DNA of 64,000 nucleotides. Origin: Tubulanus polymorphus (taxonomy: Eukaryota; Animalia; Nemertea). The DNA is taken from NCBI RefSeq assembly GCF_964204645.1, contig NC_134032.1, positions 1,358,316 through 1,422,315 on the forward strand, written 5' to 3'. Below, in pieces: positions 13,947 to 49,540 of this stretch; the first letter of the stretch is position 1, and every line of letters starts with the position of its first letter. The notes beneath the pieces were generated by a model that saw only the letters and a list, made by a program, of their open reading frames with translations, was not told the DNA's origin and did not search any database. The position numbers and the translations under genes are program-made.

Positions 13947-13947
13947 C
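13735..13947. repeat. Polypyrimidine (CCCTCT/CCCCCT/CT)n tract
   Basis: About 210 bp, almost entirely C/T. Confidence 0.95.
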
Positions 13948-20152: not shown

Positions 20153-20189
<37 letters not shown>

Positions 20190-30556: not shown

Positions 30557-30784
30557 GTGCAGCCAAGTCCGTTCCAATTCACTGTATCGTCGAACAGATG
30601 TCGTCGCCGGGTAACGCCGACAGCGTCTGCCCGTCCCAGCACGCAGCGGTGACCGGCGCGGCCGCCGCCTCCGTAGAACTCGACAGTTACGCCATTATTC
30701 CGTGTTCGACTTTATTCAACGAAATCGTACGTTCGGCGCTGATGAAACTCGGTTATTCCACCACGGAATCCATGACGGCTAAAG
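30557..30784 (+). CDS. dve: Shared exon: N-terminal part of the COMPASS/ULD (ubiquitin-like) domain
   Basis: Acceptor tttcag, donor AAAG|gtaaat (phase 1 to 1). Translates (G)AAKSVPIHCIVEQ...ELDSYAIIPCSTLFNEIVRSALMKLGYS...AKG, the characteristic Dve/SATB ULD motif. Confidence 0.95.
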
Positions 30785-31890
30785 GTAAATCGATCCCCCT
30801 ATGACATCATCATTCGACTAGCATTTTAGTCGGCTTGCTAAGTCTGAAAAATGACCTGAAGCTGCAAAATTGAGTACAAATGTCCCCTTTTGCACACAAA
30901 TAGATAACATCCACATAATTCATTTAAGATGTGGACACGCACCGGTGCAGCTGTCTTTTGACCCTAATTTGCATAAATCCAAGATGGCCGCCATCGATGC
31001 CCGAATCCAGCATTTTTCCCCATATCATCAATTTCAATCAATATCTATGGAAAATATAAAATTTAAACATTGAAATATATTTCGAAGTATAGATAATAAG
31101 CAATGATGAGCGCAGACCGCTGTTCCAATATTCTATATATCCGATTGTGGAGAAAGTCGAGTCCTGGGATTATATCGAATATAGCAGTTCGGTCAGCATC
31201 TTAACTACGCATTAAAGTGAGGGGGTATAGGGCCTACAAGTTCATCGGAGCAGAATATTACTGGGAATCGCTTTTGAACTATGGGCACCCTCTTGTTGAT
31301 TCCAGGCACTATTTTGTGGGCCCTGCCCTATGTGTTTTAAGGCTAACTCACTAACTAATTGTTGTCTTGCGCCTAACATGGATTTTTAAAGGCGGCCATC
31401 TTTGATTACCGAAATCTCATAGGCCTTGCCCACTCGAGCGGTTTTGACCCAGGCCAAATTTTGCCCGTGCCAGATTCGGCTCGGGCTAATTGTTTACACA
31501 CACTGGACTGGCCCATGGCAGTTTGACGAGGGCTAAATATGGCCTGGCCAAAATGTTGTCGGACAAGACCCGCCTGAATTTTAGCACGGGTCAAATTATC
31601 GCAAAATTGATTCTGTAAGTGACTAACCTCACTTGCCGCAGCAGTGTGTGATGTATATGTGAAACGTGCTCTCCAATTTCAACTCGAGCTTGATTCCGGT
31701 CCCGGTCCCGGTCCTGGTCCCGGCCATTGTGAAGATATTAAGAATAGAAGATATTGATTATCGAGATGATGTTGTATTATCGATGTATTAATGATGTATT
31801 GTCGATGTATTAATGATGTATTATCAATGTAATAATGATGTATTAATGATGTATTATCGATGTATTATCGTTGTGTTCGATGTATTTCAG

Positions 31891-32017
31891 GCGCGATTCA
31901 AGTAAAGAACTGGAAACCGTTGTCGTTCGAACAGATCACCGATAATCCGGAAGCTACAGTTGAAGATATTCTCTCCGATTTAACGACCGTCGCCACTTTA
32001 CGCATACGTATTTATAG
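31891..32017 (+). CDS. dve: Shared exon: C-terminal part of the COMPASS/ULD domain
   Basis: Acceptor tatttcag, donor TATAG|gtacg (phase 1 to 2), 127 nt. (G)AIQVKNWKPLSFEQITDNPEATVEDILSDLTTVATLRIRIY. Missed by the ORF track. Confidence 0.95.
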
Positions 32018-32200
32018 GTACGCTTTTTAATTCATCGTTTCGGGGCTTCGTTCGATTAATCCGAGTACGGATCCGCTGTCCGGAAAGATTTCTGAAATTT
32101 TTTTTAGACGTCCATAGTGTTTTCATTGTAATTTGAAAAAAAATCTTTCTGGCTCAATTTTGGTCTTATTATTTGGCCAAAATAGTTTTCGTTTCTCCCA

Positions 32201-32496
32201 TTAACCCTTTCAGTGCTGACTAATCAATACCCTATAGTGCTGAAGATAATTTTAAAATTCTGAAAAATTCCACCCTAGTGCGTTGAATAACGGTAATACC
32301 ACTAAAGTGCGTCTACACCGCGGCGCGGTGTATCATTAGTTACTAGTATTTCACTATGTTTGACAGGTGCTGCCATCTTTCAAGAGAGATAATTAGTAAT
32401 TACTAAATAAATCAATACACCGCAGTGCAGTGTACTAGCAAAATCAATCACTGATTCGTACACCGCACTGCGGTGTAGACGCACTGAAAGGGTTAA
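32201..32496 (+). mobile_element. piggyBac-like MITE, copy 2
   Basis: Same TIRs, TTAA on both sides. Confidence 0.9.
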
Positions 32497-33239
32497 CATG
32501 AGTTCCCCTTTTTGAATCTGTTTTCGCGGCCCTTCCAAAATTTTATGCGGAAAATACTCGACTATTCAAAAGAATTAATCTTTTAACGCATTCTCTTCTT
32601 TTCTCGCAAATCCGTGCGGTAGTTAAAAGTTTTCGATTTCGTTTTTTTCCTTCCCACCTGAAAAATCCGTACTCGGAATAATTGAAAAAAGGCCGTACAA
32701 AAACAAGGACATATCGACATTTGAAATATTAGCCGAAATTCACTTCAATTTAACGTCATTCTAATGTTTGCCGTTGCTGGAATTTCTTCCAAGTTGATGT
32801 TTTTTTTTGTTTAAATTGTTTCCATAAGGAAAATATTTCTGTTATTTGTATTGAAAGATTTGCTATTAATGTAACGCGTGTGTGTGTCTGTGGCCTGTCC
32901 AGAAATCCAGGACCGAGTGGAACTGGGTTTAATTAAATCCATTGCGTGGATGTGAGTTTAATCCACAGTGGAACTGGGTCATCCAGTTGTAGTAATCTGG
33001 TGTGCTGTGGTAGTTAATGAATAGGCCTATTTAGGTTATTTCCGCGATTTTTTTTGGATTTAAGAAAAATCAGTTTTCCACGCACCTCTGAGATCCATGG
33101 CCTAACTCGGAGACCCTCGGCCCACTGCGTGTACCCTGGAGACCCGTGGCTATCTCGGGAGGTCGATGGCTCCTCGTTCTCTGCTGAGACCCGAGGGCCC
33201 GTCATACAGCCCACAGCGACCTCCTACGCCCCAGTCCCC

Positions 33240-33415
33240 AGGACAGGACACGCCCCTCGGGAACACGTCCGTACCCCTCCAGGACACGCCCCCGTACCCC
33301 TCCAGGACATGCCCCTGTACCCTGTCCAAGACACGCCCCTCCAGGACACGCCTCCAGGACACGCCCCTCCGGAACACGCCCCCGTACCCCTCCAGGACAC
33401 GCCCCTCCGGAACAA
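33240..33415. repeat. GC-rich GGACACGCCCC repeat just upstream of the cassette A acceptor
   Basis: Irregular 15-27-bp units. Confidence 0.8.
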
Positions 33416-33467
33416 GCCGCTGTTTCATCGAAACTTTCGGACATTTTTCGACACGTTGATCTTTCAG

Positions 33468-33579
33468 TGTAGTGGTAAAAACTAACGCAGCCACTGCAGA
33501 CGTTAAAGATAAACTATTACAGTTGTTGTTGACTCAATCGCAGGGTCTACTCTCAAACCTCGGCTGCCCTATCGATAAG
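33468..33579 (+). CDS. dve: Cassette A exon 1: first half of a degenerate CUTL-like domain (Dve type)
   Basis: Acceptor ctttcag, donor AAG|gtaagc (phase 2 to 0). (S)VVVKTNAATADVKDKLLQLLLTQSQGLLSNLGCPIDK resembles the Dve KDKLL..LL.QS..LL...GCP motif. Confidence 0.9.
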
Positions 33580-34313
33580 GTAAGCATTCTTATACTTTAA
33601 ATTCATTTAATATTCCATGGTTAAGGTAAGTTTTCAGGACGCCGTTTTTCGACAGTTTTTGTGAGTTTGAACATTTATCTTATTGAAAATGAACTGAAAT
33701 CAACTCACAACTCACAACACTGCGGAACTGTGTGTCCTGGACCCAGTTCCACAGTTGTGAGTTCGAGTTATCTCTCGGTTAAAGTTAATTCATTTTCAAA
33801 GAGTTGACTCAGAAATGACTCTTACTCAGAACTGTGGAACTGTGAGTCCTGTGTTGTTAGTTTCTGTGTATATTGGGTGGGTGTTCATTAGTGGAATAAC
33901 ACGTGGAATACTTATATTGTTTTATGTATGTAGAGATTTGAGATGTTACATGTACAGTGAACCCCCCGATAAACCAGGTGGTAAGCGAGGGTGGCGGTAA
34001 ATGGGAGGGCGGTATATCGGGGGTCGACTGTATTATCATCATTATCTAAGCTATCAAACCTGATTAAGGTCTTTTTAAATTCCCGATTTGCGTTGATTCC
34101 AGTTCAGTTTAGTAAGCGCAAGTTGTTCAGTTGTCGACGTAGTGATCGTCCCAGTCATAGCTTAAGCTTCTTTAGCCCATGACGTGTCCTACAATTGTGA
34201 TTCTGTTTTTGCTCGTCAGGGGGCGTTGCATATTATAATTGTCTAGCGTGGAGCGATCATCGACCCCCTAGAACTTCGGTCTAATCATCGCGATTCAGTT
34301 GAGTAATTATGAG

Positions 34314-34596
34314 TTAACCCTATCCGTGCTGACTAATAAATACCCTATAGTGCTGAAGATAATTTGAAAATTCTGAAAAATTCCACCCTAGTGTGTTGAA
34401 TAACGGGAATAGCACTATAATGCGTCTACACCGCGGCGCAGTGTATCATTAGTTATTAGCATTTCACTATGTTTGACAGGTGCTGCCATCTTTCAAGAGA
34501 GATAATTACTAAAAACCAATAACATCAATACACCGCAGTGTGGTGTACTAGCAAAATCCAACACCGATTCATACACCGCACTGCGGTGTAGACGCA
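34314..34596 (+). mobile_element. piggyBac-like MITE, copy 3 (damaged ends)
   Basis: Internal sequence near-identical to the other copies; right TIR truncated. Confidence 0.85.
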
Positions 34597-35074
34597 ATTA
34601 AAATGAATCATAACTCACAACATCGGAAATGTGATTATTAGCCGTTCTGTTCGAAGGATCTTCGATGAAAATTCTGAGAAATGTTTATTCGAAAGTTTCT
34701 CGGCGCGGCGACCGATGTATCCATCGCCGAGCTCGTAAATCACCGTGGTAACGAAACAGATAGGATTTCGGTTGTTTGGTCTCGGCCTCGGGGCGTGATC
34801 AGTAGAACATGTCGAGCGAGTAGAGAGGAATGAGAGGAGAGAGGACAGCGATTACGTTAAGCGGCTTGTAAAGCGTGTCGTGCGTCGATGATAATCATAA
34901 TAATTGTTGTTCGCTGCTGCTAAATAGATTCAGATCCTCGGAATAAGAAGGGACCCGGGCCCGGTTTTATAGACCGGTATTACCTTTAACCCGCGGGCTA
35001 ACTCAATTCATTATCAATTGAGTTAGCCCCCGGGTTAGAGGTAATACCAGTCCCAGCCTGACCCCAGCAGTTGA

Positions 35075-35290
35075 ATAGTTACTGGACCAAGTTCAGCAGT
35101 TAAACAGTTACTGGACCAAGTTCACAGTTTCTGAATCCAAGTTTCATAGTTACTGGACAAAGTTCCACAGTTACTGGACAAAGTTCCACACTGACTGGAC
35201 AAAGTTCCACAGTTACTGGACAAAGTTCCCCATTTACTGGACAAAGTTCCACAGTTACTGGACCAAATTTGGCAATAGCTGGACCCATTT
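35075..35290. repeat. 21-bp minisatellite
   Basis: Unit AGTTACTGGACAAAGTTCCAC. Confidence 0.9.
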
Positions 35291-36194
35291 ATACAATAAC
35301 TAACGGATACCAGTAACTGTTAAACTTTTTTGTGGAACTTAGTTTTTCATAGGTCACATTTGTCAGTAAGGTTTGATGCTTAGGAGTTCGAATCAATCCA
35401 TTCGTTTAATCCTCGAGTCTAATTCAAGCGACGACCGGGAGACCGACCGGGTTTTATCGTCCGTGAAACTTTCAACTTGTCCTCGGTTTCGTTTTTTACC
35501 GCCGCCATTAGAGGGCGTGGTTCGTCGTCGTCGTTATCGCGAGGATGAAAGATAATCCCGTTATAAAACGCGTCGTCGACGCAGATGTTTTTCGCTATAG
35601 TAACGTTTTACGACAATGGAAACCGGTTTTTGATCGCATTTGAAAAGATTTGCGGCTATAAGCCTCGAGCGTAGCGCGAGCGCCGACCGACACCGATAAT
35701 ACTCGACTGAACAATGCACCGTTTGAAAAAAAAAAAGAAGAATACTCTCCATAAAGTGAAATCGTCATCTATTTATTTGTTGTACGCGATAAATATTTGT
35801 GCTGGATTAAATTAATCGTATTAAGGGATATAGAATACAGATTGAAACTAGCGGCGCGTAGGTGATGATGTAGATTACGTCTTAAGCACTTGGCGTGAGT
35901 GGCGGGATGTAGGGAGCAGGGAGGAGGGAGGGAGGGGGCTCAGCTGCGCGTCAATCCGACGAATCAAATCGCTAAATTGTATTTCTCATGACGAGATCGA
36001 TGCGTAAGTTTTTGCGCGACGGTCGGTAATCCGCCCGCGCCGGATTATAGCTGGTACCGCCGCGCGATCGCGGCCCGCGGGCGCGCGCGCATCTGATCCG
36101 GCCCGCGGGCGTCGTGTTACCGAACCAGCGATCTAGTTGTTAAGTGAGATTTGTGATTTAGCTCAAGGGTGACATGTGTAAACGATGTTCGACC

Positions 36195-36770
36195 GAATAA
36201 ACCGTACGTCAGCCGCCGCCGGTTACTCATCTATTGGTTATTACACGCGACTGACACCAGGTGGCGCTACATCGCGACGAATAAACCGTTCGTCAGCCGC
36301 CGCCGGTTACTCATCTATTGGTTATTACACGCGACTGACACCAGGTGGCGCTACATCGCGACGAATAAAGCGTCAGCCGCCGCCGGTTACTCATCTATTG
36401 GTTATTACACCCGACTGACACCAGGTGGCGCTGCATCGCGACGAATAAACCATATGTCAGTCGCCGCCAGTTACTCGACATCTATTCGTTATTACACCCG
36501 ACTGACACCAGGTGGCGCTACATCGCGACGAATAAACCGTTCGTCAGCCGCCGCCGGTTACTCATCTATTGGTTATTACACCCGACTGACACCAGGTGGC
36601 GCTGCATCGCAACGAATAAACCATATGTCAGTCGCCGCCAGTTACTCGACATCTATTCGTTATTACACCCGACTGACACCAGGTGGCGCTACATCGCGAC
36701 GAATAAACCGTTCGTAAGCCGCCGCCAGTTACTCATCTAATTACACCCGACTGACACCAGGTGGCAGTAG
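36195..36770. repeat. About 84-bp minisatellite carrying ACACCAGGTGGCGCT (7 copies)
   Basis: Motif starts near 36256, 36340, 36420, 36507, 36591, 36678 and 36756. Confidence 0.92.
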
Positions 36771-37954: not shown

Positions 37955-38380
37955 TTAACCCTTTCAGTGCTGACTAATTAATACCCTATAGTGCTGAAGA
38001 TAATTTGAAAATTTTGAAAAATTCCACCCTAGTGTGTTGAATAACGGGAATACCACTATAGTGCGTCTACACCGCGGTGCAGTGTATCGTTAGTTCCTAA
38101 TATTTCACTATGTTTGACTGGTGCTGCCATTTTTCAAGAGAGATAATTACTATTTACATCAATACACTGCAGTGCGGTGTACTAGCAAAATCCACCACTG
38201 ATTTGTACACCGCACTGCGGTGTATAAATCAGCAATAGATTAAATAGATAAATTATTTCACTGTGTTTGACAGGTGCCGCCATTTTTCAATAGAGATAAT
38301 TACTAATTACATCAATACACCACAGTGCGGTGTACTAGTGAAATCTATCACCGATTCATACACCGCACTGAAAGGGTTAA
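37955..38380 (+). mobile_element. piggyBac-like MITE, copy 4 (internal duplication)
   Basis: Both TIRs and TTAA present; the right-hand part is duplicated. Confidence 0.88.
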
Positions 38381-38461
38381 CCGGTATTTTTATGCGAAAT
38401 AACTAATCGATATTATCGATCGCAGTTCTAACGTTCGCGTTTCATTTTCGTATCGTTTCAG

Positions 38462-40387
38462 GATCTGTTGAATCTGATTAGTCAAGGCGATATATCGAGC
38501 GCGAATATCGACGACGATAAACGTCTGTCGTTTCTGCGCTGGTACAACGAAATGTTGGAGAAAATCAACCACGGAAAACTACGCCATTACAACAACGCCG
38601 AAATCCCGCCGCTGCTTCCCGTATTCCCTAAAAACTCGGTCGTCGTTCCGGCCTCGTCTCCGGAATCGTCGCCGAGCAAAGACGCGGTAGACGGCGCCGC
38701 CAACAACAACAATAAACATTCGTCGTCGCCGGCGATGGCCGCCGTTTCGATCCATAAAACGCGGTTTCGGACTTCGTTCGACCCGGATTTAGAGATACCT
38801 CGATTGCAGCAGTGGTTCCAGCGTAATCAGCACCCGACGCGCGATCAGATGTTGCGGTATCTGCACGAGTTGAACGCGCTGGAGTCGCGTCGCGGTCGCA
38901 AGCCGCTCGACCTCACCAACATCATCTACTGGTTCAAGAACGCGCGCGCCGCTCAACGACGCGCGTGTCGCAATCTGGAGCTGGCGCTCGACGACGGCGC
39001 ACGCCTCGACGACAGAACGTGCCTGGATGACGGCGCGAATCTAGACGACGGCGCACGATTGGACGACGGCACACGCCTGAACGGCGCATCGACGGATGAC
39101 GGCACACGCCGCGCTGACGGCGCACAGCACGAGTTCATCGACGATAATGACAACCTCAGCGTCGAACGTCACAGTCCGATTTCCCTAGTAACGACGCGGC
39201 ATAGTGCGCCACCTGGTGGTCGCGTTATTTGTAACGGCGATTCCGACGCGGAATCTAAATCGGGCGGAGGCGGGGCGCCGGCGACGACCGATTCGACGAT
39301 TCCCGAATTACCGAATAAGAACGCGGTTTACGTCGTGAATCCGCTGATTCCCGATCGAATCGTCGCGAACGGCTGCGACGCCGAGTTCACGACTCGTCGA
39401 GAGGAGGCTCTAGATATGAGTCGACACGGCTCGCCGACTCGCAACGATAAAACACCTCCGCCGGTTAACCGGCTAAACAGGTCGACACCGACGATCAACG
39501 ACGACGATGAAAAGGAGGATGAAAACGGTCGTTATAACGACGATGATGATGATTTCTCGGATCATTCCAACGAAGCGATCGATATGTCGACCGGCGGCGC
39601 TCGCGAGTCGACGTGGGTCGACCGGTCAACTAGTCGACTACTCGACCGATCGAACGGCGACCGGTCGAGCAGCGTCGACTCGTCGACCAGCTCGTTTCCG
39701 CTGGAGACTAAACCGGATTTGAATACGTCGTCGCCGTCGTTATCGTCGCACTCGAGTCCGAGTCGACTGACGAACGGCGCGACGTCCGTGAAGGCGGAGC
39801 CTCCCGACGACGGAGGACACCATCACCGCGACAACGATGCATTTAAAGCGGCGTTCGCGGCGCACGCCCACCTGACGAGCGCCGCCGCGGCCGGTCTGTC
39901 GATGGTGCAGTCGTCGCTCGGCTATCATCACCATCGGTTACACCTACCGCAGAATCATCCTCACCACATGATCGCGCCTTTCTACGGCGTGATGTCTCCT
40001 TCCCTCCTGTCTCATCATCACCATCATCATCATCAACACGGCCATCCTCATCATCACAACAACCAGCCGCAGCAGCAGCAGCAGCAGCACGGTACGGGCG
40101 TAACGACGGCGACCGGTAACAGTAGCGCGTCAGCGGCCGCCGAGGAGCGGCGTAAACGCACGCGCGTTTTCATCGACCCGCTGTCGGAGATCCCGAAGTT
40201 GGAGAAATGGTTCGTGGAGGACACTCACCCGACGGCGTACATGATCGAGAAATACTGCGATGAGTTAAACAAGTCCGAATATCGTCAACGATTTCCGCGT
40301 CTCGAACCGAAAAACGTTCAATTGTGGTTTAAAAATCATCGCGCGAAAGTGAAACGAGCTCGGTTAGAATCGCCGACGGCCGTGTGA
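38462..40387 (+). CDS. dve: Cassette A terminal exon: two atypical K50 homeodomains of Dve/Compass (isoform A = 852 aa from ATG 25840)
   Basis: Acceptor gtttcag, phase 0. HD1 KTRFRTSFDPDLEIPRLQQWF...IIYWFKNARAAQRR (about 38753-38961). HD2 RRKRTRVFIDPLSEIPKLEKWF...VQLWFKNHRAKVKR (about 40148-40357). His and Gln tracts; TGA stop. Exon lengths sum to 2559 nt, a multiple of 3. Confidence 0.96.
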   Translation, partial: DLLNLISQGDISSANIDDDKRLSFLRWYNEMLEKINHGKLRHYNNAEIPPLLPVFPKNSVVVPASSPESSPSKDAVDGAANNNNKHSSSPAMAAVSIHKTRFRTSFDPDLEIPRLQQWFQRNQHPTRDQMLRYLHELNALESRRGRKPLDLTNIIYWFKNARAAQRRACRNLELALDDGARLDDRTCLDDGANLDDGARLDDGTRLNGASTDDGTRRADGAQHEFIDDNDNLSVERHSPISLVTTRHSAPPGGRVICNGDSDAESKSGGGGAPATTDSTIPELPNKNAVYVVNPLIPDRIVANGCDAEFTTRREEALDMSRHGSPTRNDKTPPPVNRLNRSTPTINDDDEKEDENGRYNDDDDDFSDHSNEAIDMSTGGARESTWVDRSTSRLLDRSNGDRSSSVDSSTSSFPLETKPDLNTSSPSLSSHSSPSRLTNGATSVKAEPPDDGGHHHRDNDAFKAAFAAHAHLTSAAAAGLSMVQSSLGYHHHRLHLPQNHPHHMIAPFYGVMSPSLLSHHHHHHHQHGHPHHHNNQPQQQQQQHGTGVTTATGNSSASAAAEERRKRTRVFIDPLSEIPKLEKWFVEDTHPTAYMIEKYCDELNKSEYRQRFPRLEPKNVQLWFKNHRAKVKRARLESPTAV

Positions 40388-40962
40388 CGCGAATCACTGA
40401 TTGAATCACCGACTGAATCACCGACTGAATCACTGATTTTCATGTGATGATTCTCTATTTCCCTATCACTCACATTTCTATTATTGGTCTCAATATTTTT
40501 TCTATTCGTTTCAAATTCCGTTGAACGTTGTTGTTTTCTTTTTCTTCTTTTCGTCGATTTTGAGAAATATTTTTATATCGAGTCTCGAAAATGACGAATT
40601 TTTTGATACATTGCCAAAAAAACACAAGCAATAGTAGTATACCTATCATTCCCCTAGATTTACATGCACATGTCGGTGTGTACACATGCACATGTCGGTG
40701 TGTACACATGTACATGTTAGTGTGTACACATGTACATGTTGGTGTGTAAATGCATTTAAATTTGTGTCGATATACATTCGATGTACGTAGGCCTACATGT
40801 CTGTGTAGTATGTTGATGTACATGTACATGTCATTGTGTTGGTTTGTTGATGTACATGTACATGTCGATGATGTATAACTGTGCTATGATTATCACCAAT
40901 CAATCAATTTTGTCTCGCGTTTTTATTGAACTGAGTTCAACGTGCTATATTTGTCTCATCTA

Positions 40963-41695
40963 TAGTTCATCTCACCGCGTACAGGTGGAGCTAGTGTCTG
41001 CGACCTGCTCATGATAGTTCATCTCACCGCGTACAGGTGGAGCCAGTCTCTACAGGATGCTGGTTATTGTTCATCTCGGCTATCGTCTGCTGGATGCTCA
41101 TAATAGTTCATCTCACCGCGTACAGGTGGAGATAGTGTCTGCGACCGGCTCATATTAGTTCATCTCGCCGTGTACAGGTGGAGCTAGTGTCTGCTGGATG
41201 CTCATAGTTCATCTCGCTGTGTACAGGTGGAGCCAGTGTCTGTGACTTGCTCATAATAGTTCATCTCGCCGTGTACAGGTGGAGCTAGTGTCTGTGACTT
41301 GCTCATAATAGTTCATCTCGCCGTGTACAGGTGGAGCTAGTGTCTGCTGGATGCTCATAGTTCATCTCGCCGTGTACAGGTGGAGATAGTGTCTGCGACC
41401 GGCTCATAATAGTTCATCTCGCCGTGTACAGGTGGAGCTAGTGTCTGCTGGATGCTCATAGTTCATCTCGCTGTGTACAGGTAGAGCCAGTGTCTGCGAC
41501 CTGCTCATAATAGTTCATCTCGCCGTGTACAGGTGGAGCTAGTGTCTGCGACCTGCTCATAATAGTTCATCTCGCCGTGTACAGGTGGAGCTAGTGTCTG
41601 CTGGATGCTCATAGTTCATCTCGCCGTGTACAGGTGGAGCTAGTGTCTGCTGGATGCTCATAGTTCATCTCGTTGTGTACAGGTGGAGCTAGTGA
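40963..41695. repeat. 49-52-bp minisatellite carrying GTACAGGTGGAGCTAGTG (about 14 copies)
   Basis: Direct reading of the units. Confidence 0.92.
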
Positions 41696-43042
41696 CTCTA
41701 AAGCAGTTGAAGGACGGCCGCTTACGTTCCCCCTATGATGTCACGGGGGTGTTTCGGATTCGCAGCCAATAGGTTTAAACTTTCATTACATATAAACAGA
41801 TATATATATACATTCCTATCAATTTTATTTGTTAAATTCTTCGCTTTTGATAAATTATTTATCATTGATTATTATAATTATAATTACTATTATTAATGGT
41901 TTAATTTTATCATTATCTACGCATACGAAAAGACCCACGAATAAAACTGAATTGAGATTGATTCTACTAACTGTACTGGCGCTGGGCAGCACTTTGTCTC
42001 TCGACGTTTTAATTCACGTCGCCGAGACTGTCTGCCGACGGGTTAATTATTTTTTTTTTTGGGGATCCCGGTTTTAATGAGGGTTGATTCCGACCGAAAC
42101 GATGAAATTTAGACTGGCGTAAATCTGTAAATAGCGCGTCGGGGCTAGATTCGTAATCGATCTCCGCGACTGACAAACAAACTTCCAAGCAATATATAAA
42201 ATAGATGCATTTATCCTAAACGTATGATGAAAACGATGATGATGATGAAAATGTCTCGGTTTCCTGTCTATATTTTGCCCATCTGAGAATTCGACGAATT
42301 TCAAAACTTTTTGAAATCGTCCGCCAAATTAAACGTTTTTTAATACATTCCATTTTTATCCGATGTAAATTTGCTAAACTTATTCAGTATTCGAAGCCAA
42401 ATTCAGTCTGATGTTTTTACTGCCCCCCGTGCGCGTGTGTTAGGAGTCATTTTTAGATGATTTCCTCAAATTTCATTATGGTGATGTCGATAAAATCGAA
42501 ATGAAATTTCCACTCAAATCCAAACTTACTCTATTATCGTCTCGCGAGCCTGATTTTTAATAAGCTTTAAAATTAAGAAAAATCGAATTTGATAACGTCT
42601 CATTAAACGGTGTCTCATTGATTAGCGGCTCATTAATTAGGAAGTTAATTAATCGCTTGCGATCGTGCGGCATTATGGTTTTTAAAACTTGATGAATAAA
42701 AAAAAAAACTGTTTTACGCGGTATTTTATCGTTTACGTCGAATGATTGTATCATGAAGATTTCTGTGTTTTCAATTGAAATATAAATCGATTATGATTAT
42801 AATGATTATTATGATTATTATTATTATTATTATTGATATTAGATGTGCTATCACCAGTAATTATTCCACCTTCGTTTTATATAAGTTATTATTATTACAT
42901 TTACTATATTTCGCTTATTTCTAATGCATTAAACATTCCATTTAAACGTTTCAATATTTCCACATATTTCGGGGTGGATTGAAAAGAAAAAAAAATCGAA
43001 ATTTTAACGAAACTGCGAAAGAATGCAGTTTGATGCTGGTAT

Positions 43043-43580
43043 AAATCTGCTGTCTGTACCCTGAACACCTCAGACAATCTGCTGTCTGTACACTGAACAC
43101 CTCAGACAATCTGCTGTCTGTACCGGGCACCACCTCAGACAATCTGCTGTCTGTACCCTGAACACCTCAGACAATCTGCTGTCTGTACCCTGAACACCTC
43201 AGACAATCTGCTGTCTGTACCCTGAACACCTCAGACAATCTGCTGTCTGTACCCTGCACCACCTCAGACAATCTGCTGTCTGTACCCTGAACCACCTCAG
43301 TCAATCTGCTGTCTGTACCCTGAACACCTCAGACAATCTGCTGTCTGTACCCTGCACCACCTCAGACAATCTGCTGTCTGTACCCTGAACACCTCAGACA
43401 ATCTGCTGTCTGTACCCTGAACACCTCAGACAATCTGCTGTCTGTACCCGGCCCCACCTCGGACAATCTGCTGTCTGTACCCTGAACACCTCAGACAATC
43501 TGCTGTCTGTACCCTGCGCCACCTCAGACAATCTGCTGTCTGTACCCTGAACACCTCAGACAATCTGCTGTCTGTACACT
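43043..43580. repeat. 32-bp minisatellite, about 17 copies
   Basis: Unit AATCTGCTGTCTGTACCCTGAACACCTCAGAC. Confidence 0.95.
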
Positions 43581-44466
43581 GTTATGTATCCACTGTCTGT
43601 AAACCCTATCTGTAAACCATCACTAACCAAGTAGGCCAATTCATTCACTGTTCATCCATTCTTTTATGGATGGATGGATACAGGTCTGCATGCATCTGTA
43701 GCCCAAAATTTGGTGCCATTTGGCTGCTGATGTCAAAATCAATACCGGTACTTTTTAACAAAGTTTTTCAAGCTGAATTTGAAGACGCTTTCATCAATCG
43801 CATTGATAATCAATGATACATGTACCAATATCTACCCGAGTAGCATCTGCAACCTTAAGGTAACGCAATCAGTATCAAGATGTCCTAGTAACAGCCTTTG
43901 TTGGTCACCAAAACCGGCGCTTAATTCGTAAGTTTTATCGCAGACGCTTCGATGAATTGTCTTGAGGTTTGGTTACAGATATCATCACGAGATAAATTTG
44001 ATCGGACGAAAGCTGAACGTCCTGCGATCTTTTTCAAAAATCGCCATTTTAAGTGTGGATTCCCTCTCGATGGTTCGCCGTATGGCAGTCAGATTTATAC
44101 CTGCGTTAACTAATACGTGATCTCCTCCTCGGGCGCCGTTTCAATCGGGAGGTGGTTCACCGTGTTTTCGACCGTTTGGACTGAATTTTTCTCCGATTTT
44201 GATTTTCTGGTTGATTTCATCGTCGTCTCGATTTTGAATTTAATTTTTCCAAATGAATTCGTAAGATCGCTATATTTGCACCGAACTCGCTGTACTATTG
44301 TTAAAAACACACAGATTATTTTAGATTCAATAAGATAAAGATATATATGAATATATATATATATATATATATATTAACACTAAATCTATGTATACAAATA
44401 ATTGTTTTGTACAAATATCGTTTTTTGTACATATTTTCTGGAGATGAAGAAAAGGAAAAAATGAAA

Positions 44467-44472
44467 AATAAA
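44467..44472 (+). terminator. Candidate poly(A) signal of isoform A
   Basis: AATAAA preceded by several TGTA elements and followed by T/GT-rich sequence. Other AATAAA at 41940 and 42695 are alternatives. Confidence 0.45.
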
Positions 44473-44959
44473 CTATTGTCAATGACACCAATTTTAAAAC
44501 GCTGCGTATTTCAGTTTATTTACTTGGGATATTGGTTCGTTTACTCTGTTTCACTGACCCAGTTTCACTGACCCAGTTTCGCCCGTTCGAATGACCCAGT
44601 TTCGTCCTGTTTGACCCAGTTCTAAACCTTGGTTTCTACGAACAGGTTATTATTGTCTTTAATTCAATTGAAGAAAAAACCCTTCCTCGCTGATCGACTC
44701 GTGCTCCGGCTATCGTCGATTTCTACCTCCCCCTGGTGACACCCGTGTTAACTAATCCATTACCAGAAACATTCGAGGGCAGTTAGTTATTCCAAGCCTT
44801 GTGAATATTGTCCATCGAGGCATCTTTTATGGATAAGGACACATAATATTCGACAGGTTTTTAGTGCGGAACATTAAATTTTTGGCAAGTATTCGGTGAA
44901 TTTTGTTCCGTCAAAAATGTTCTCTAAATATTGTCTGTTTTTTTTTTTCATAATTCCAG

Positions 44960-45065
44960 TGACCAGACGATCACGTGGACAGATCACGCGGTACGCTGTG
45001 CTGTGATTGGTCTACTGAAAGAGACTAGTCAAACAATCCTTGCTTCCCAGTGTCCACTTTCTCAG
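44960..45065 (+). CDS. Cassette B exon 1: first half of a SATB-like CUTL domain
   Basis: Acceptor taattccag, donor CAG|gtaaat (phase 2 to 0). (S)DQTITWTDHAVRCAVIGLLKETSQTILASQCPLSQ. Entry phase matches the donor at 32017. Confidence 0.9.
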
Positions 45066-45095
45066 GTAAATGTGTAAATCTTTAATGTTTCTTCA

Positions 45096-45384
45096 TTAAC
45101 CCTTTCAGTGCTGACTTATTAATACCCTTTAGTGCTAGAGATAATTTTTAAATTTTAAAAAATTCCACCCTAGTGTGTTGAATAACGGGAATACCATTAT
45201 AGTGCGTCTACACTGCGGCGCGGTGTATCGTTAGTTACTAGTATTTCACTATGTTTGTCAGGTGCTGCCATTTTTCAAGAGAGATAATTACTAATAACAT
45301 CAATACACCGCAGTGTGGTGTACTAGCAAAATCCATCACTGATTTACACACCGCACTGCAGTGTAGACGCACTGAAAGGGTTAA
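45096..45384 (+). mobile_element. piggyBac-like MITE, copy 5
   Basis: Same TIRs, TTAA on both sides. Confidence 0.9.
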
Positions 45385-45748
45385 TCGAACTTGATTAAAA
45401 GACCTACCCCTTTTTCAAAAGCTGGTTAGTTAGCCCTAAGGGGAGGGGATCCAGGGTCCAATTTCAACTACCTCAACAAAAATGGGCGCTTTGAAATTAA
45501 GGCGCATCATAGGAATCAACCCCAATTCACAGTGCGAACAATTTTCGACTATCTATGATGATATTTTTGCAAGAACCTGACTACTGTGTTCAAAGTGGTT
45601 TGAATTATGTTCAGCCTTTCTTCAAGAAGGGTATATCAGATTATTGGGATGCCTCGTGAGGCATGTGGGTTGGGGGGGACCCTGGATCCACCTGGTTTTA
45701 TTCGTCATACGTTTCAACTAATTTCTACATGTATTTATTTTCCGCTAG

Positions 45749-45845
45749 TCTCTGATATCGAACATCGCGAATTTGAAATATTCCGCGAAAATCAGCCGTG
45801 AAAAATGTCGGGAATTCGGCGTGTGGTACGACAAATACCGCCGAG
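45749..45845 (+). CDS. Cassette B exon 2: second half of the SATB-like CUTL domain
   Basis: Acceptor ttttccgctag, donor CGAG|gtgagt (phase 0 to 1). SLISNIANLKYSAKISREKCREFGVWYDKYRR. Confidence 0.9.
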
Positions 45846-45865
45846 GTGAGTCATTTCCGGTTCTG

Positions 45866-46003
45866 GGGCCGGTTCCATAGTCAAGACTTAAGACCAAAAG
45901 TGGTCTTAAATCTTAAGACTGGTCTTAAGTTGTTAGATTGGTTATGGAACTAAGATGGTCGTAAATTGGTCTTAAGTCTAAGCCATGACTATCGAACTGG
46001 GAC
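45866..46003. mobile_element. CTTAAGAC-family MITE with CTG target duplication (others at 37719 partial and 59514-59651)
   Basis: ctg-GGGCCGGTTCCATAGTC...GACTATCGAACTGGGAC-ctg. Confidence 0.75.
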
Positions 46004-46252
46004 CTGGTCTCTCAGAATTTATATACAGTTAACACCCAGTTGGTGGTCGCATATTCTACTTCGGGTAGGCGCTAATTTAGATAATACGTTATTAAGATTA
46101 TTAGGAGAATGAACCAGGAAAATTACTTATCAACTAATTAACTCATTTAGTTACTGATTTGCTTTAAAATCTAAATTTGCAAATGGCGTTGATTAAGGCG
46201 ATCATTATGCGAGGTGTTACTAAAGTTTTGGTTTCCTGTTGTTCTATCTCAG

Positions 46253-46397
46253 AGAAGTTTTCCAATGAGACGGCAGGAGGCGCCACTGAAGGGGCTGTTA
46301 AAGATACGAGGCTGACGTTCCACCCGAAATATGAATTACCGATCATGAGGAAATGGTACAGCGAGTGTAATAACCCGACAGATCGGTTACTGGAGCG
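46253..46397 (+). CDS. Cassette B exon 3: N-terminal half of homeodomain B1
   Basis: Acceptor tctatctcag, donor GAGCG|gtgagt (phase 1 to 2). ...KDTRLTFHPKYELPIMRKWYSECNNPTDRLLE. Confidence 0.88.
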
Positions 46398-46548
46398 GTG
46401 AGTATCGTCAGTGAGGGAGGGTTCTATCGTCAACTCTTCAGCGGGTTGGCAGCCTGTGGCAGCCTTGTGTGGCAGCCTGTGGCAGCCTTGTGTGGCAGCC
46501 TGTTGCAGCCCTGTGTTTGTAGTAACAACAGGCAGTAAGGTTCTGTGT

Positions 46549-47259
46549 AGAGAGAATCCAACAATAATAAGGAAAAAAAAGTGCGAAAATGTTTCCTTGA
46601 GCTAGTGTAGTTTATTCAGCGTTTTGACTATATCCTTATAGTCATCTTCAGGAATACTGTATTCCTTGAGCTAGTGTAGTTTATTCAGCGTTTTGACTTT
46701 ATCCTAATAATCATCTTCAGGAATACTGTATTCCTTGAGCTAGTGTAGTTTATTCAACGTTTCGACTATATCCTAATAGTCATCTTCAGGAATACTGTAT
46801 TCCTTGAGCTAGTGTAGTTTATTCAACGTTTCGACTTTATCCTAATAGTCATCCTCAGGAATACTGTATTCCTTGAGCTAGTGTAGTTTATTCAACGTTT
46901 CGACTATATCCTAATACGTTGAATAAACTACACTAGCTCAAGGAATACAGTATTCCTGAAGATGATCGGATATAGTCGAAACGTTGAATAAACTACACTA
47001 GCTCAAGGAATACAGTATTCCTGAAGATAACTATTAGGATATAGTCGAAACGTTGAATAAACTAAACTAGCTCAAGGAATACAGTATTCCTGAAGATAAC
47101 TATTAGGATATAGTCGAAACGTTGAATAAACTAAACTAGCTCAAGGAATACAGTATTCCTGAAGATGACTATTAGGATATAGTCGAAACGTTGAATAAAC
47201 TAAACTAGCTTCAGTTACATTTTCGGACTTATTTTCGTTATTATCGTGGGATTCTCTCT
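46549..47259. mobile_element. Penelope-like fold-back element with tandem 69-bp minimal hammerhead ribozyme units on both arms
   Basis: Outer inverted repeats (46549-46592 / 47217-47259). About 4.7 units on the - strand (46593-46915) and about 4 units on the + strand (46916-47210). Confidence 0.8.
47154..47197 (+). ncRNA. Minimal type I hammerhead ribozyme (best-preserved sense unit)
   Basis: TATTC-CTGAAGA-T-GACTAT(taggat)ATAGTC-GAAA-CG-T-T-GAATA: stem I, catalytic core, stem II and a palindromic ACGT stem III. Confidence 0.75.
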
Positions 47260-47328
47260 GCATCGCTTCAACACGGATCCAGAGTGTTTTATCAATCGTG
47301 AGTAAGGTTGTGTATGATTATATTGTAG

Positions 47329-47489
47329 TTATGTGACGGAACTGAATGAAAGCGCGACGCGACACGACCGCGCTCAGCTGACCGTACACAATCTGAGAAA
47401 CTGGTGGAAAAACGAGCGACAACGAGAGAAAAAACACGGACCGCGGACTATGAAATTCCAGGAGCCGAGGCCGTGTTTTACTTACTACG
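47329..47489 (+). CDS. Cassette B exon 4: C-terminal half of homeodomain B1
   Basis: Acceptor tattgtag, donor TACG|gtgagc (phase 2 to 1). (R)YVTELNESATRHDRAQLTVHNLRNWWKNERQREKK... Confidence 0.88.
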
Positions 47490-47643
47490 GTGAGCAGCCT
47501 ATTTACCCCTCGTCCCGTATGAGCTTTTTCCCACTCTACAGTCAACAGATATCAACTTATTTTCTCATAAGTTCTCGGTATTTGGATGGGGGAGCAAGGA
47601 TGTGTTGTTTTGTGTCTGGCGTAGAAAGGTCATCATCTTAAAA

Positions 47644-47933
47644 CCCTTTGAGTACTGACTAATTAATACCCTATAGTGCTGGAGATAATTTGAAAATTCT
47701 GAAAAATTCCACCCTAGTGTGTTGAATAACGGGAATACCACTATAGTGCGTCTACACCACGGCGCGGTGTATCATTAGTTACTAATATTTCACTGTTCGA
47801 CAGGTGCTGCCATCTTTCAATGGAGATAATTAGTAATTACTAATTAAATCAATACACCGCAGTGCGGTGTACTAGCAAAATCCATCACTGATTTATACAC
47901 CACACTGCGGTGTAGACGCACTGAAAGGGTTAA
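47644..47933 (+). mobile_element. piggyBac-like MITE, copy 6
   Basis: Slightly mutated left TIR, intact right TIR plus TTAA. Confidence 0.88.
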
Positions 47934-48806
47934 AACGAAACCTCAAAACATATCTTTTTACTAGGAAAGCTTTTACCATTGAATAATGTCTCTTACAGTG
48001 TTAGTTTTCATGTTCTTGTATTGCAATGGTATTTTTAATGATTTTATAATTTCATGTATATTTCTAATCAAAAGTAGGAAAACGAAAGTATTATATGTTT
48101 GGGTCCTGTGATAAATTCTGTTAAAAGTTCGTCGCGCCCTCTGGTGGGATAACTTGGTCTCGATCTCGATGAGTAACGCCAACGGCAACCAATTGTGGCT
48201 TTTTGTTAGCAGGGGATAGAGGGTTAACTGAACTTAGATAAACTGGAGCCGCTGTTTGAAGGCTTCAGTCGACAGAGCGTTTTATCACTTCCTCGGAGAG
48301 ATGGTTCCAGTCAATGGTAGTCCGCACAAAGAATTAGTTCGAATATTCAGGGTCCAGTTCCACGGTTCTGAGTTAAGATTTGACTCTGAGTTAACTCAAT
48401 GAAAATGAACTAACTTTAACTCAGAGTTAACTCTAACTCACAACTGTGGAACTGGGTCCCGAGTTCAGAGTTAACTCTAACTCACAACTGTGGAACTGGG
48501 TCCAGGGGTTTTGGTATTCGGTACCACTAAACAGTTACTGTTATTCCGCACATTACGTGTAATCGGGTTTAAACTTACTAAGTCTGGATTGAATTTAGGC
48601 TTGACGAGTCGTTTTGCCCTAGGCCAGTTGTAAATAGTCTGTGTTGCGGGTCCACTTTGTATTCGATATTTGGTAAATGAGAAAATAGACAAGTTGGGAT
48701 TCGAGACGCGTCGGTGCATGAAGCGTTGAATAAATAAGGGCGGCTCCGAGTTTTACGCAATGGTTACCTTGATGAATAAAGAATTTCGAAATTTATTTTC
48801 TTGCAG

Positions 48807-49540
48807 ATGAAACGGCGGCGAACCCGGCCTCCGGTAAAGTACATATAACATTCGATACAGTGCACGAGATACCTCTACTACGTCACTGGTACACGAGTAA
48901 TAAAAAACCATCTAACGAGTTACTGCAGCACTACGCGAACACGTTAAACCACAGTCCGGTCAGAGACGGAAAACCGAAAGTGAATTATCATAAACTACGT
49001 AACTGGTGGAATAACGAAAAACAACGCGAGCGCAAATCCGAACAGCATCAGCTGCCGAGACGCGGTCCCGGTCGACCTCCCAAATACCCGGCTTTAAACG
49101 AGCAAGCTAAAACAACCGATAACAGCGCCGCTACCGCGACTAGCGGCGCCGAACCGTACTATAAGAGACAGAGAACTAGCGATCATCATCAGCAGGGCGA
49201 GAGGCCGGTGTCTCAGAACGAGCAGCCGCCTGTCGCGCCGTCCTCTCCGCCGTTACAGTTGACTAATCTGGTGAACTCGCCGAGTCGCGCGTCTGGAATC
49301 CAGCGCTCGAGTCCGATCTCCCAATCTCTGAACTTTCATCACCACGGTTTAGATTTACTGGCCGAATCTCAGTTCTACGGGGGACACGCGCCCGGCGCTA
49401 TGATGTTTACGGCGTATCAGCCGAGCTCGTCGACGCCACTATTCCCGTCGCCGAGCCCGTATCGACCGCTGTCGCTGAGTAACGCTCGCGAAAGCCCGTC
49501 TGAACGATCATCGCAACATAGTAACAAGGACAACACGTAA
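48807..49540 (+). CDS. Cassette B terminal exon: homeodomain B2, AT-hook and Ser/Pro-rich tail (isoform B = 587 aa from ATG 25840)
   Basis: Acceptor ttttcttgcag, phase 1. KVHITFDTVHEIPLLRHWY...KLRNWWNNEKQRERK, then RRGPGRPPK; TAA at 49538-49540. Isoform exon sum is 1764 nt, a multiple of 3. Confidence 0.9.

What the first reader, a model, noticed from the sequence alone, without database searches (positions are those of the whole stretch)
30557..49540. One locus, two transcription factors: a shared ULD/COMPASS domain spliced to either a Dve-type or a SATB-type 3' cassette
Seen: the ULD exon ends in phase 2 at 32017. Two downstream acceptors continue it in frame, 33468 (cassette A, stop 40387) and 44960 (cassette B, stop 49540). 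Cassette B has no start codon or ULD exon of its own that I could find, and all five of its exons chain with canonical GT-AG sites and no stops. Known: the ULD mediates oligomerisation of SATB proteins; invertebrate Dve/Compass proteins have ULD plus two homeodomains, while vertebrate SATB has ULD plus CUTL, CUT repeats and a homeodomain. Inference: mutually exclusive 3' ends give two DNA-binding modules on an identical oligomerisation domain, allowing combinatorial A/B hetero-oligomers. Automatic annotation would probably split or miss cassette B. I cannot check whether this arrangement is already reported in other invertebrates.
Basis: partly seen in the sequence, partly recalled or inferred. 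Interest (0 to 1): 0.92.

Follow-up and report, generated by a model that had tools for sequence, protein, structure and literature searches.

The report
Nemertean Cmp/Cmpl two-cassette homeobox locus
In the ribbon worm Tubulanus polymorphus, one gene appears to splice a single shared oligomerisation domain onto either of two alternative DNA-binding ends; sea urchins are known to do this and the arrangement was published as exclusive to their group, so finding it in a protostome makes it much older.

Summary
NCBI protein names identify the organism as the nemertean Tubulanus polymorphus. The ULD lies in two exons (30557-30784, 31891-32017) and ends in phase 2. It is the only ULD in the 268-Mb genome. 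Two in-frame cassettes follow. Cassette A (33468-33579, 38463-40387) is a typical Compass/Dve end with two homeodomains. Cassette B (five GT-AG exons, 44960-49540) has no in-frame ATG before the middle of its first homeodomain.

RNA contigs show B1-B2-B3 spliced. They also show acceptor 44960 joined to an exon that is not in the 1.36 kb upstream. The B contig carries exactly 28 upstream letters. That is the number expected from a k=31 graph if its upstream exon is shared with A1 (A1 starts TGT, B1 starts TGA). The letters themselves were not printed, so the 32017>44960 junction is inferred, not read.

"SATB-type" is wrong. B has a SATB-like CUTL but no CUT repeats, and its two homeodomains are CMPl-type (WWKNER).

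The arrangement is already known as the sea-urchin Cmp/Cmpl locus (Cavalieri 2013), which was published as exclusive to ambulacrarians. I find the same layout in Lingula, and identical shared ULDs in a scallop. RefSeq splits B off as a truncated gene. The locus is a new member of a known kind and widens its taxonomic range.

The parts
5576..5777 (+). Common upstream coding exon (residues about 36-105 of RefSeq isoform X1). The first exon of X1 lies outside the window.
   Evidence: tblastn of P0122 on the window; splice sites read.
30557..30784 (+). ULD exon a, shared.
   Evidence: Pfam PF16534 profile 1-68, E 3.3e-15; one of only two ULD matches in the genome.
31891..32017 (+). ULD exon b, shared. 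It ends in phase 2 (..TATAG|gt) and is the branch point for the two cassettes.
   Evidence: Pfam PF16534 profile 71-109, E 5e-16. The predicted dimer interface (residues 127-156 of P0002) lies in this exon.
33468..33579 (+). Cassette A exon 1. It holds a diverged CUTL-like first half and starts TGT.
   Evidence: The junction RIRIY-S-VVVK is present in P0002; sequence read.
38463..40387 (+). Cassette A exon 2. It encodes two CMP/Dve-type homeodomains (WFKNAR and WFKNHR, each with a 10-residue insertion) and the stop codon.
   Evidence: Pfam Homeodomain 4.6e-11; 100% match to P0002.
44960..45065 (+). Cassette B exon 1 (first half of CUTL). It starts TGA.
   Evidence: Pfam CUTL profile 8-38; SATB1 CUTL in the PDB, E 0.0036; present in RNA contigs X2 record 12 and X5 record 28.
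45749..45845 (+). Cassette B exon 2 (second half of CUTL).
   Evidence: Pfam CUTL profile 39-70, E 1.3e-9; SATB1 CUTL, E 2.6e-5; GT..AG joints seen in X2 and X5.
46253..46397 (+). Cassette B exon 3 (N-terminal half of CMPl-type homeodomain 1). It contains the Met where the RefSeq model starts.
   Evidence: joint 45845>46253 in X2 and X5.
47329..47489 (+). Cassette B exon 4 (C-terminal half of homeodomain 1, WWKNER).
   Evidence: Donor ACG|gtgagc; the junctions match P0001.
48807..49540 (+). Cassette B exon 5 (homeodomain 2, WWNNEK, plus the C-terminal tail and stop).
   Evidence: 100% match to P0001. Runs X1-X5 hold 36-85% of its 31-letter words.

Best explanation
This is the Tubulanus polymorphus ortholog of the Cmp/Cmpl locus described in sea urchins. 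One promoter region and a common set of 5' exons encode the N-terminus and the ULD/Compass oligomerisation domain. The common exons in the window are 5576-5777, 30557-30784 and 31891-32017.

The phase-2 donor at 32017 is spliced to one of two acceptors:
- To 33468, giving cassette A, which is CMP/Dve-type with two WFKN homeodomains.
- To 44960, skipping A's terminal exon and its polyadenylation site, giving cassette B. B is CMPl-type, with a SATB-like CUTL and two WWKNE homeodomains.

The result is two transcription factors with different DNA-binding modules on an identical self-associating domain.

Shown: the exon structures, the expression and internal splicing of B, use of acceptor 44960 with a non-local upstream exon, the uniqueness of the ULD in the genome, and the orthology of B to CMPl-type proteins.

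Inferred: that the upstream exon joined to B1 is exon b, and that the two isoforms form mixed oligomers.
For: 1. The ULD occurs only at these two exons in the 268-Mb genome. A Pfam-level CUTL occurs only in B.

2. B1-B2 encode a conserved CUTL. It is 65-68% identical to the oyster and Lingula B exons and matches the SATB1 CUTL. There is no in-frame ATG before mid-homeodomain 1. An upstream phase-2 coding exon is therefore required, and exon b is one.

3. RNA run X2 has a 1489-nt contig at depth 95 that covers B1/B2/B3 with GT..AG joints. It also carries 26 further 5' letters that lie nowhere in 43600-46440. The two letters before B1 read AG, as exon b ends.

4. That contig therefore has exactly 28 letters 5' of B1. 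Logan contigs are non-branching k=31 paths with all 31-mers distinct (PMC12424806). A1 begins TGT and B1 begins TGA. A B-specific path that shares its upstream exon with the A1 path must start with 31-3 = 28 shared letters.

5. The same order of parts (ULD, A1, two A homeodomains, B1, B2, B homeodomain) occurs on one strand in Lingula and in Ptychodera. Both have phase-2 ULD donors and matching B1 acceptors.

6. The scallop proteins P0176 (B-type) and P0061 (A-type) come from one scaffold. They are 100% identical through the ULD and diverge right after it.

7. Scorpion transcript contigs encode a full ULD-Ser-CUTL-homeodomain protein.

8. In a homeodomain tree the B-type sequences form one group (support 97/89). 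The group includes the hemichordate CMPl-type homeodomain and both Tubulanus B homeodomains.

9. cDNA evidence for mutually exclusive Cmp and Cmpl exon sets behind a common N-terminus exists in sea urchin (PMC3784565).

10. The ULD homodimer scores 0.67 against a best control of 0.00. The mark was reached by 21 of 30 proteins solved as pairs of one chain and 0 of 23 solved as single chains. The three runs agree in 100% of contacts and pLDDT is at least 81. SATB1 ULD oligomers are solved, so this pass may come from memory.
Against: - The 26 loose letters were not printed, so the 32017>44960 junction is not directly read.
- RefSeq, which uses RNA evidence, has only A-type isoforms X1 and X2 for LOC141910186. 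It models B as a separate gene, LOC141910189.
- The oyster RefSeq B-type model has its own short 'MG' first exon and no ULD. B-specific promoters may therefore exist in some lineages.
- The contig end at 28 letters could in principle come from another branch or from a drop in coverage.
Confidence: 0.8

Rival explanations
1. B is an independent gene, as RefSeq models it (LOC141910189). It would have its own promoter and 5' exon somewhere in 40388-43599. Its product would lack the ULD, either starting at 'MRKWY' or carrying a tiny first coding exon as in the oyster model.
For: The RefSeq annotation. The oyster P0125 model begins 'MG' from a separate first exon. A single-copy, strongly transcribed segment lies at 43600-44238, upstream of B1. 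The upstream 26 letters were not identified.
Against: - A start at MRKWY would discard the conserved CUTL and cut helix 1 of homeodomain 1.
- The expressed 43600-44238 contigs are not joined to B1, although a 26-letter side would have been listed as a joint.
- The contig stops exactly 28 letters into the upstream exon, which is the signature of an exon shared with the TGT-starting A1 path.
- Orthologues in scallop, scorpion, spiders and Potamilus carry a ULD.
Confidence: 0.12
2. B1 is spliced to some other upstream exon of the A gene, for example A1 or ULD exon a. The product would be out of frame or non-productive, a splicing by-product rather than a second factor.
For: A1 and exon a also end in AG. 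The upstream letters were not read.
Against: - A1 ends in phase 0 and exon a in phase 1, while B1 needs phase 2.
- The alternative partners of those exons (A2 starts G, exon b starts G) differ from B1 at the first base. That would give 30 shared letters, not the 28 observed.
- B's 414-codon frame is intact and conserved, and the contig depth of 95 is not that of a by-product.
Confidence: 0.05
3. B is a decaying tandem duplicate (pseudogene) or is not translated.
For: B has no close orthologue. The next best hit to P0001 has E 9e-14 and covers only a homeodomain. The branches of the two B homeodomains are long.
Against: B has five intact exons without stops and with canonical splice sites. It appears as spliced RNA in two studies. 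The CUTL and the WWKNER signature are conserved across phyla.
Confidence: 0.03

Closest known systems
Cmp/Cmpl locus of sea urchins and Saccoglossus (Cavalieri, Melfi & Spinelli 2013, PLoS Genet, PMC3784565)
   Same: Common 5' exons encode the N-terminus and the Compass/ULD domain. They are followed by mutually exclusive exon sets. The first set is CMP with two homeodomains, each carrying a 10-residue insertion. The second, downstream set is CMPl. The order of cassettes is the same. The Tubulanus B homeodomains group with the hemichordate CMPl-type homeodomain.
   Different: - The paper states that the locus is exclusive to ambulacrarians and absent from protostomes. This one is in a nemertean, with the same layout in Lingula and a shared ULD in a scallop.
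- Tubulanus B has two CMPl-type homeodomains with 10-residue insertions. Sea-urchin CMPl has one homeodomain with an 11-residue insertion.
- The CMPl-specific CUTL was not described in the paper.
- Direct cDNA proof exists for the sea urchin and not yet for Tubulanus.
COMPASS/Dve family (Drosophila dve, C. elegans dve-1, amphioxus Compass)
   Same: Cassette A with the ULD is a standard member. It has a ULD plus two homeodomains with a 10-residue insertion, and it is 41% identical to the Lineus 'dve-1-like' protein.
   Different: Reviews describe the family as single-product genes (PMC10515288, PMC4901127). Here the same ULD also serves a second cassette.
Vertebrate SATB1/SATB2
   Same: Both have a ULD followed by a CUTL. 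B1 and B2 align with the SATB1 CUTL (PDB 2L1P, 3NZL, 4Q2J) at E 2.6e-5 and 3.6e-3.
   Different: B has no CUT1 or CUT2 domains. Its homeodomains have W48 and a 10-residue insertion, not F48 with a single Gly insertion. No homeodomain-level similarity to SATB was detected in the PDB.
CUX/CASP shared locus (alternative 3' ends giving a homeodomain factor or a Golgi protein)
   Same: It is another CUT-class locus in which one N-terminal region is spliced to alternative 3' exon sets (PMC10515288).
   Different: Its domains are unrelated. CASP is not a DNA-binding paralogue, whereas here both ends are paralogous CUTL-plus-homeodomain modules.
Oyster 'Cmp1/Cmp2' (Paps et al. 2015, PMC5322547)
   Same: The paper lists two Cmp-family homeobox entries with adjacent gene identifiers in Crassostrea gigas. 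This fits an A cassette and a B cassette side by side.
   Different: They are listed as two genes. Neither a link to Cmpl nor a shared ULD is mentioned. I did not examine the C. gigas locus itself.

Membership tests
Cmp/Cmpl dual-cassette locus (PMC3784565) | A single set of 5' exons encoding the Compass/ULD domain, with no second ULD for the downstream cassette. | tested here: met
   ULD matches occur only at window 30565-30789 and 31881-32012 in the whole genome. tblastn finds none elsewhere in the window.
Cmp/Cmpl dual-cassette locus (PMC3784565) | An upstream cassette encoding CMP, with two homeodomains that each carry a 10-residue insertion. | tested here: met
   A2 has homeodomains with WFKNAR and WFKNHR, each with a 10-residue insertion. 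The RefSeq proteins P0002 and P0122 match.
Cmp/Cmpl dual-cassette locus (PMC3784565) | A downstream cassette encoding a CMPl-type homeodomain. | tested here: met
   The B homeodomains fall in the B/CMPl-type group with the Ptychodera homeodomain (support 97/89). They share the RLTFHP...WWKNER signature.
Cmp/Cmpl dual-cassette locus (PMC3784565) | [quoted passage not shown] | tested here: not met
   Tubulanus B has two homeodomains, each with a 10-residue insertion. An 11-residue insertion is seen in Ptychodera and in chelicerates, and a 10-residue insertion in all spiralian B-type homeodomains examined.
Cmp/Cmpl dual-cassette locus (PMC3784565) | Transcripts of both forms share the same 5' exons (mutually exclusive splicing). 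| tested here: inconclusive
   The A form is established by RefSeq proteins. For the B form, acceptor 44960 is joined to a non-local exon and exactly 28 upstream letters are present, which fits the exon b/A1 branch. The letters themselves were not shown.
SATB | ULD followed by CUTL. | tested here: met
   Pfam ULD and CUTL; SATB1 CUTL matches in the PDB.
SATB | Two CUT domains. | tested here: not met
   There is no CUT match in the B exons. The five CUT matches in the genome lie on contigs C2, C10 and C11, and none on C8.
SATB | A homeodomain with F48 and a single Gly insertion between helices I and II. | tested here: not met
COMPASS/Dve (CMP) family | An N-terminal Compass/ULD domain plus two homeodomains with a 10-residue insertion, and no CUT domain. 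| tested here: met
   The ULD plus cassette A meets this. The ULD plus cassette B also fits the wording, but its homeodomains belong to the separate CMPl-type group.

The most novel reading that the evidence does not exclude
The two-cassette Cmp/Cmpl locus is not an ambulacrarian novelty. It would date to the last common ancestor of protostomes and deuterostomes and be retained in nemerteans, brachiopods and bivalves, and, with its ULD-CUTL-homeodomain product, in chelicerates. Its CMPl cassette is the only invertebrate module with a SATB-grade CUTL directly behind the ULD. It would then be the lineage from which vertebrate SATB arose by gaining CUT domains. This would overturn the use of the locus as an ambulacrarian synapomorphy and revise the Cmp-to-SATB model.
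Probability: 0.35. Interest if true: 0.7.

Novelty: new member of a known kind. Interest (0 to 1): 0.55.

Why it matters
One shared oligomerisation domain serving two different DNA-binding ends is a compact way to make two regulators, and possibly mixed oligomers, from one locus. It was demonstrated only in sea urchins, where CMPl binds a chromatin insulator. It was then proposed as a molecular synapomorphy of Ambulacraria.

Three observations argue that the arrangement is ancestral to bilaterians. The same architecture is present in a nemertean. The layout is conserved in a brachiopod. A scallop has identical shared ULDs on A-type and B-type proteins.

There are two practical consequences. 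First, current annotations systematically break the locus. The B cassette is annotated as a truncated orphan gene in Tubulanus, Lingula and Saccostrea. It is fused with A in Ptychodera, and named 'SATB2' or 'mucin-12-like' in a scallop. Homeobox surveys therefore miscount the family. Second, the CMPl cassette becomes the natural candidate when asking where the SATB CUTL came from.

Tried and rejected
- Second ULD for B. tblastn with both ULD exons against the whole window, run permissively at E up to 50, found nothing beyond chance. A Pfam ULD search over the genome found only this locus.
- CUT repeats in or near B: none.
- Close orthologues or transcript-derived proteins of B in the protein collections. 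Only RefSeq P0001 was found at 100% identity. The exhaustive search gave homeodomain-level hits only, starting at E 9e-14. No Tubulanus ULD+B protein is on record.
- Homeodomain similarity to SATB through the PDB: no SATB hit for either the B-type or the A-type homeodomains. The SATB link therefore rests on the CUTL alone.
- Microsynteny with an EMP70/TM9SF gene. One lies upstream of the locus in Ptychodera and in Potamilus, but in Tubulanus the nearest one on the contig is 14 Mb away. I dropped this line.
- The look-up of encoding contigs had no record for Lineus P0003 or Ptychodera P0131, because only the longest isoform is indexed. The Potamilus gene range was too long to return DNA.
- Rfam at gathering score over 40300-50000: no family. 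This includes the 69-nt palindromic array and the expressed 43600-44238 segment.
- Searching or looking up a joined ULD+B protein model was left out. All searches used single exons by reference or database proteins as returned.
- Read laying was kept to 2,841 letters and placed to avoid the long tandem arrays.


Full report
**What is there**

NCBI names on identical proteins show that the window comes from the nemertean Tubulanus polymorphus. It is contig C8:1358316-1422315 of a 268-Mb assembly. I re-derived the exon model by hand from the sequence.

The shared 5' part:
- ULD exon a is 30557-30784. The reading frame is open from its acceptor, and 'VPIHCIVEQ', the start of the ULD, precedes the ATG at 30598. 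It is therefore an internal exon.
- ULD exon b is 31891-32017 and ends ...TATAG|gt in phase 2.
- Pfam places ULD profile positions 1-68 in exon a (E 3e-15) and 71-109 in exon b (E 5e-16).
- A further common coding exon lies at 5576-5777. The first exon of RefSeq isoform X1 is outside the window.

Cassette A:
- A1 is 33468-33579. A2 is 38463-40387, a single large exon.
- A2 encodes two homeodomains, WFKNAR and WFKNHR, each with the 10-residue insertion typical of Compass/Dve proteins.
- The RefSeq proteins XP_074657005 and XP_074657006 (LOC141910186 isoforms X1 and X2) contain exactly these junctions. The two isoforms differ only at the N-terminus.

Cassette B:
- Five exons: 44960-45065, 45749-45845, 46253-46397, 47329-47489 and 48807-49540. 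All are GT-AG and stop-free.
- B1 and B2 together make a CUTL domain. They cover Pfam profile positions 8-38 and 39-70, the latter at E 1.3e-9.
- B1 and B2 match the solved SATB1 CUTL at E 3.6e-3 and 2.6e-5.
- B3 and B4 encode a split homeodomain, and B5 encodes a second one.

**Is B tied to the ULD?**

Several independent lines bear on this.

1. Across the whole genome, the ULD profile matches only the two exons in this window. A CUTL above Pfam's cut-off is found only in B.

2. B has no in-frame ATG from B1 up to 'MRKWY' in the middle of helix 1 of its first homeodomain. RefSeq's separate gene LOC141910189 (XP_074657009, 315 aa) begins at exactly that Met. That model discards a CUTL that is 65-68% identical to the corresponding exons in Lingula and an oyster. 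The RefSeq start is therefore almost certainly an annotation truncation. A coding exon ending in phase 2 must precede B1.

3. I had one read-laying run. I spent it on 43600-46440 to stay under the 6,000-letter limit and to avoid the long tandem arrays at 43044-43581 and 46593-47210.
   - Run X1 behaves as DNA, with even depth of 21-25 and no intron joints.
   - Runs X2 (2024) and X5 (2014, a different study) carry contigs with GT..AG joints 45065>45749 and 45845>46253. B is therefore expressed and spliced as predicted.
   - The X2 contig is 1489 nt long at depth 95. Its length fits B1-B5 plus about 218 nt of 3' UTR.
   - It aligns from two letters before 44960. Those letters read AG, which fits both the intron's acceptor and the end of exon b.
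   - It has 26 more 5' letters that lie nowhere in the 1.36 kb upstream of B1. Joints with sides of 21-27 letters were listed elsewhere in the same output, so a local source for these letters would have been reported.
   - B1 is therefore spliced to a distant exon. The table of loose ends was truncated, so the letters themselves were not shown.

4. The number of upstream letters is informative.
   - Logan contigs are non-branching paths of a k=31 de Bruijn graph, in which all 31-mers are distinct (PMC12424806).
   - A1 begins TGT and B1 begins TGA.
   - If both follow the same exon, the B-specific path must begin with 31-3 = 28 letters of that exon.
   - The contig has exactly 26+2 = 28 letters before B1.
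   - The other candidate donors are A1 (next exon starts G) and exon a (next exon starts G). Each would give 30 letters, and each is out of phase.
   - I treat this as good but indirect evidence. The junction 32017>44960 is inferred, not read.

**What B is**

- It has no CUT repeat. The genome's five CUT matches lie on other contigs.

An exhaustive protein search with RefSeq's B protein found no close orthologue. It did find a set of relatives sharing the signature RLTFHP..ELP.MR.WY...WWKNE(R/K)QRE. Pfam and source names show the following:
- ULD+CUTL+homeodomain proteins in scorpion (RefSeq and transcript contigs), spiders, horseshoe crabs, the scallop Mizuhopecten and the mussel Potamilus.
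- CUTL+homeodomain proteins without a ULD, modelled as separate genes, in Lingula and Saccostrea.
- A 1143-aa Ptychodera flava model that strings ULD, A-type homeodomains, a second CUTL and a B-type homeodomain together.

In a homeodomain tree (38 rows, 71 columns, IQ-TREE), the B-type sequences form one side of a branch with support 97/89. This group includes the hemichordate sequence and both Tubulanus B homeodomains. The two Tubulanus homeodomains pair with each other, which suggests a local duplication, although both sit on long branches.

**The arrangement is conserved and already described in one clade**

Cavalieri, Melfi and Spinelli (2013, PMC3784565) showed with cDNAs that the sea-urchin Cmp/Cmpl locus makes two proteins. 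They are identical for 233 N-terminal residues, including the Compass domain. Exons e5-6 give CMP, with two homeodomains each carrying a 10-residue insertion. The mutually exclusive exons e7-9 give CMPl, with one homeodomain carrying an 11-residue insertion.

The authors found the same organisation in Saccoglossus. [quoted passage not shown] They offered the locus as support for ambulacrarian monophyly. The reviews I read from 2015 and 2023 do not mention CMPl outside that clade, and a text search for the name found no follow-up.

My comparisons contradict the claim of exclusivity.
- **Lingula.** ULD exon b, A1, two A-type homeodomains, and then 3 kb further B1, B2 and a B-type homeodomain all lie on one strand.
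- **Ptychodera.** The same order holds.
- **Splice phases.** In Lingula and Ptychodera the ULD donor is phase 2 (..AAG|gt). The B1 acceptor supplies the third base, as in Tubulanus.
- **Scallop.** A 'SATB2' model (B-type) and a 'mucin-12-like' model (A-type) come from one scaffold. They are 100% identical through the ULD and diverge directly after ...ATLRIRLSS.
- **Pacific oyster.** A homeobox survey lists Cmp1 and Cmp2 with adjacent gene identifiers (PMC5322547).

The Tubulanus locus is thus a new, protostome member of a known kind of locus. It has its own variations: two CMPl-type homeodomains, and a 10-residue rather than 11-residue insertion.

**Mechanism and function**

The shown parts are the gene anatomy, the expression of B, and its splicing to a distant exon.

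The likely mechanism is competition at the 32017 donor between the near acceptor and the far one. The near acceptor is 33468. It is followed by A's terminal exon and poly(A) site. The far acceptor is 44960. A single-copy segment at 43600-44238 has 4-7 times the k-mer depth of the B exons in X2. It may be A's long 3' UTR. If so, A would be several-fold more abundant than B, as Cmp is relative to Cmpl in the sea urchin. I could not test this.

Because the ULD is identical in both products, any ULD self-association implies that mixed A/B oligomers can form wherever both are made. A two-copy prediction of residues 47-166 of P0002 gave these figures:
- Score 0.67, against a best control of 0.00.
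- The mark was reached by 21 of 30 proteins solved as pairs of one chain and by 0 of 23 solved as single chains.
- The three runs agree in 100% of contacts, and pLDDT is at least 81.

SATB1 ULD oligomers are solved, so this pass may be memory of that complex. It shows likeness, not binding. Hetero-oligomers remain an inference.

**Rivals**

- The main rival is RefSeq's picture of B as a separate gene with its own promoter. The oyster model with its own 'MG' first exon shows that this can be annotated, and both modes could coexist. I give it about 0.12.
- Splicing of B1 to another A-gene exon fails on phase and on the 28-letter count (0.05).
- A pseudogene is unlikely given the intact frame, the conservation and the spliced RNA (0.03).

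Exons were searched one by one by reference, and database proteins were used as returned.

**Verdict**

Shared ULD with alternative cassettes: yes, at about 0.8. SATB-type cassette: no. The locus type is already known, so this is a new member of a known kind. Its interest is moderate. It removes a published clade-specific character, it explains a recurrent annotation error, and it points to the CMPl cassette as a candidate source of the SATB CUTL.

Noticed in passing
window 43600-44238: This segment is single-copy in the genome. In RNA run X2 its k-mer depth is 392-713, which is 4-7 times that of the B exons. It is not joined to B1, has no convincing ORF and has no Rfam match. It may be a long 3' UTR of cassette A or a separate RNA.
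   Followed up: partly
window 46593-47210: A palindromic pair of 69-nt tandem arrays (about 4.5 copies each, arms 95% complementary) lies in the intron that splits B's first homeodomain. Another note of the scan calls them minimal hammerheads. Rfam at gathering score finds no hammerhead or any other family there.
   Followed up: partly
window 45098-45384, 47642-47933 and 38101-38400: Copies of a roughly 290-nt dispersed element (91-94% alike) sit in introns of both cassettes. They account for huge depths (up to about 3x10^5) in all runs.
   Followed up: no
window 41085-41694 and 43044-43581: Two long tandem arrays lie between A's stop codon and B1. Their periods are 101/254 nt and 32 nt.
   Followed up: no
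L006 (Lingula anatina LFEI02000230.1) 4288-12653: The locus layout matches Tubulanus: ULD exon b, A1, two A homeodomains, then B1, B2 and one B homeodomain on the same strand. RefSeq splits it into a 993-aa gene and a 214-aa gene.
   Followed up: partly
L007 (Ptychodera flava CM083799.1) 11000-20922: RefSeq fuses the A and B cassettes into one 1143-aa protein. The genome shows two B-type homeodomain matches (20289-20498 and 20701-20922), so a two-homeodomain B cassette is not unique to Tubulanus.
   Followed up: partly
L005 (Saccostrea cucullata JAVVLV010011024.1) 10001-14879: The oyster B-type RefSeq model (CUTL plus homeodomain, 238 aa) starts with its own 'MG' exon. No A-type exon lies within 10 kb upstream. 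This may be a B-specific promoter or an annotation artefact.
   Followed up: partly
P0265 and P0238 (Parasteatoda tepidariorum): In this spider the B-type (ULD+CUTL) and A-type (ULD plus two homeodomains) proteins come from records of different length (91.0 and 84.4 Mb). The two ends may therefore sit in separate genes, each with its own ULD.
   Followed up: no
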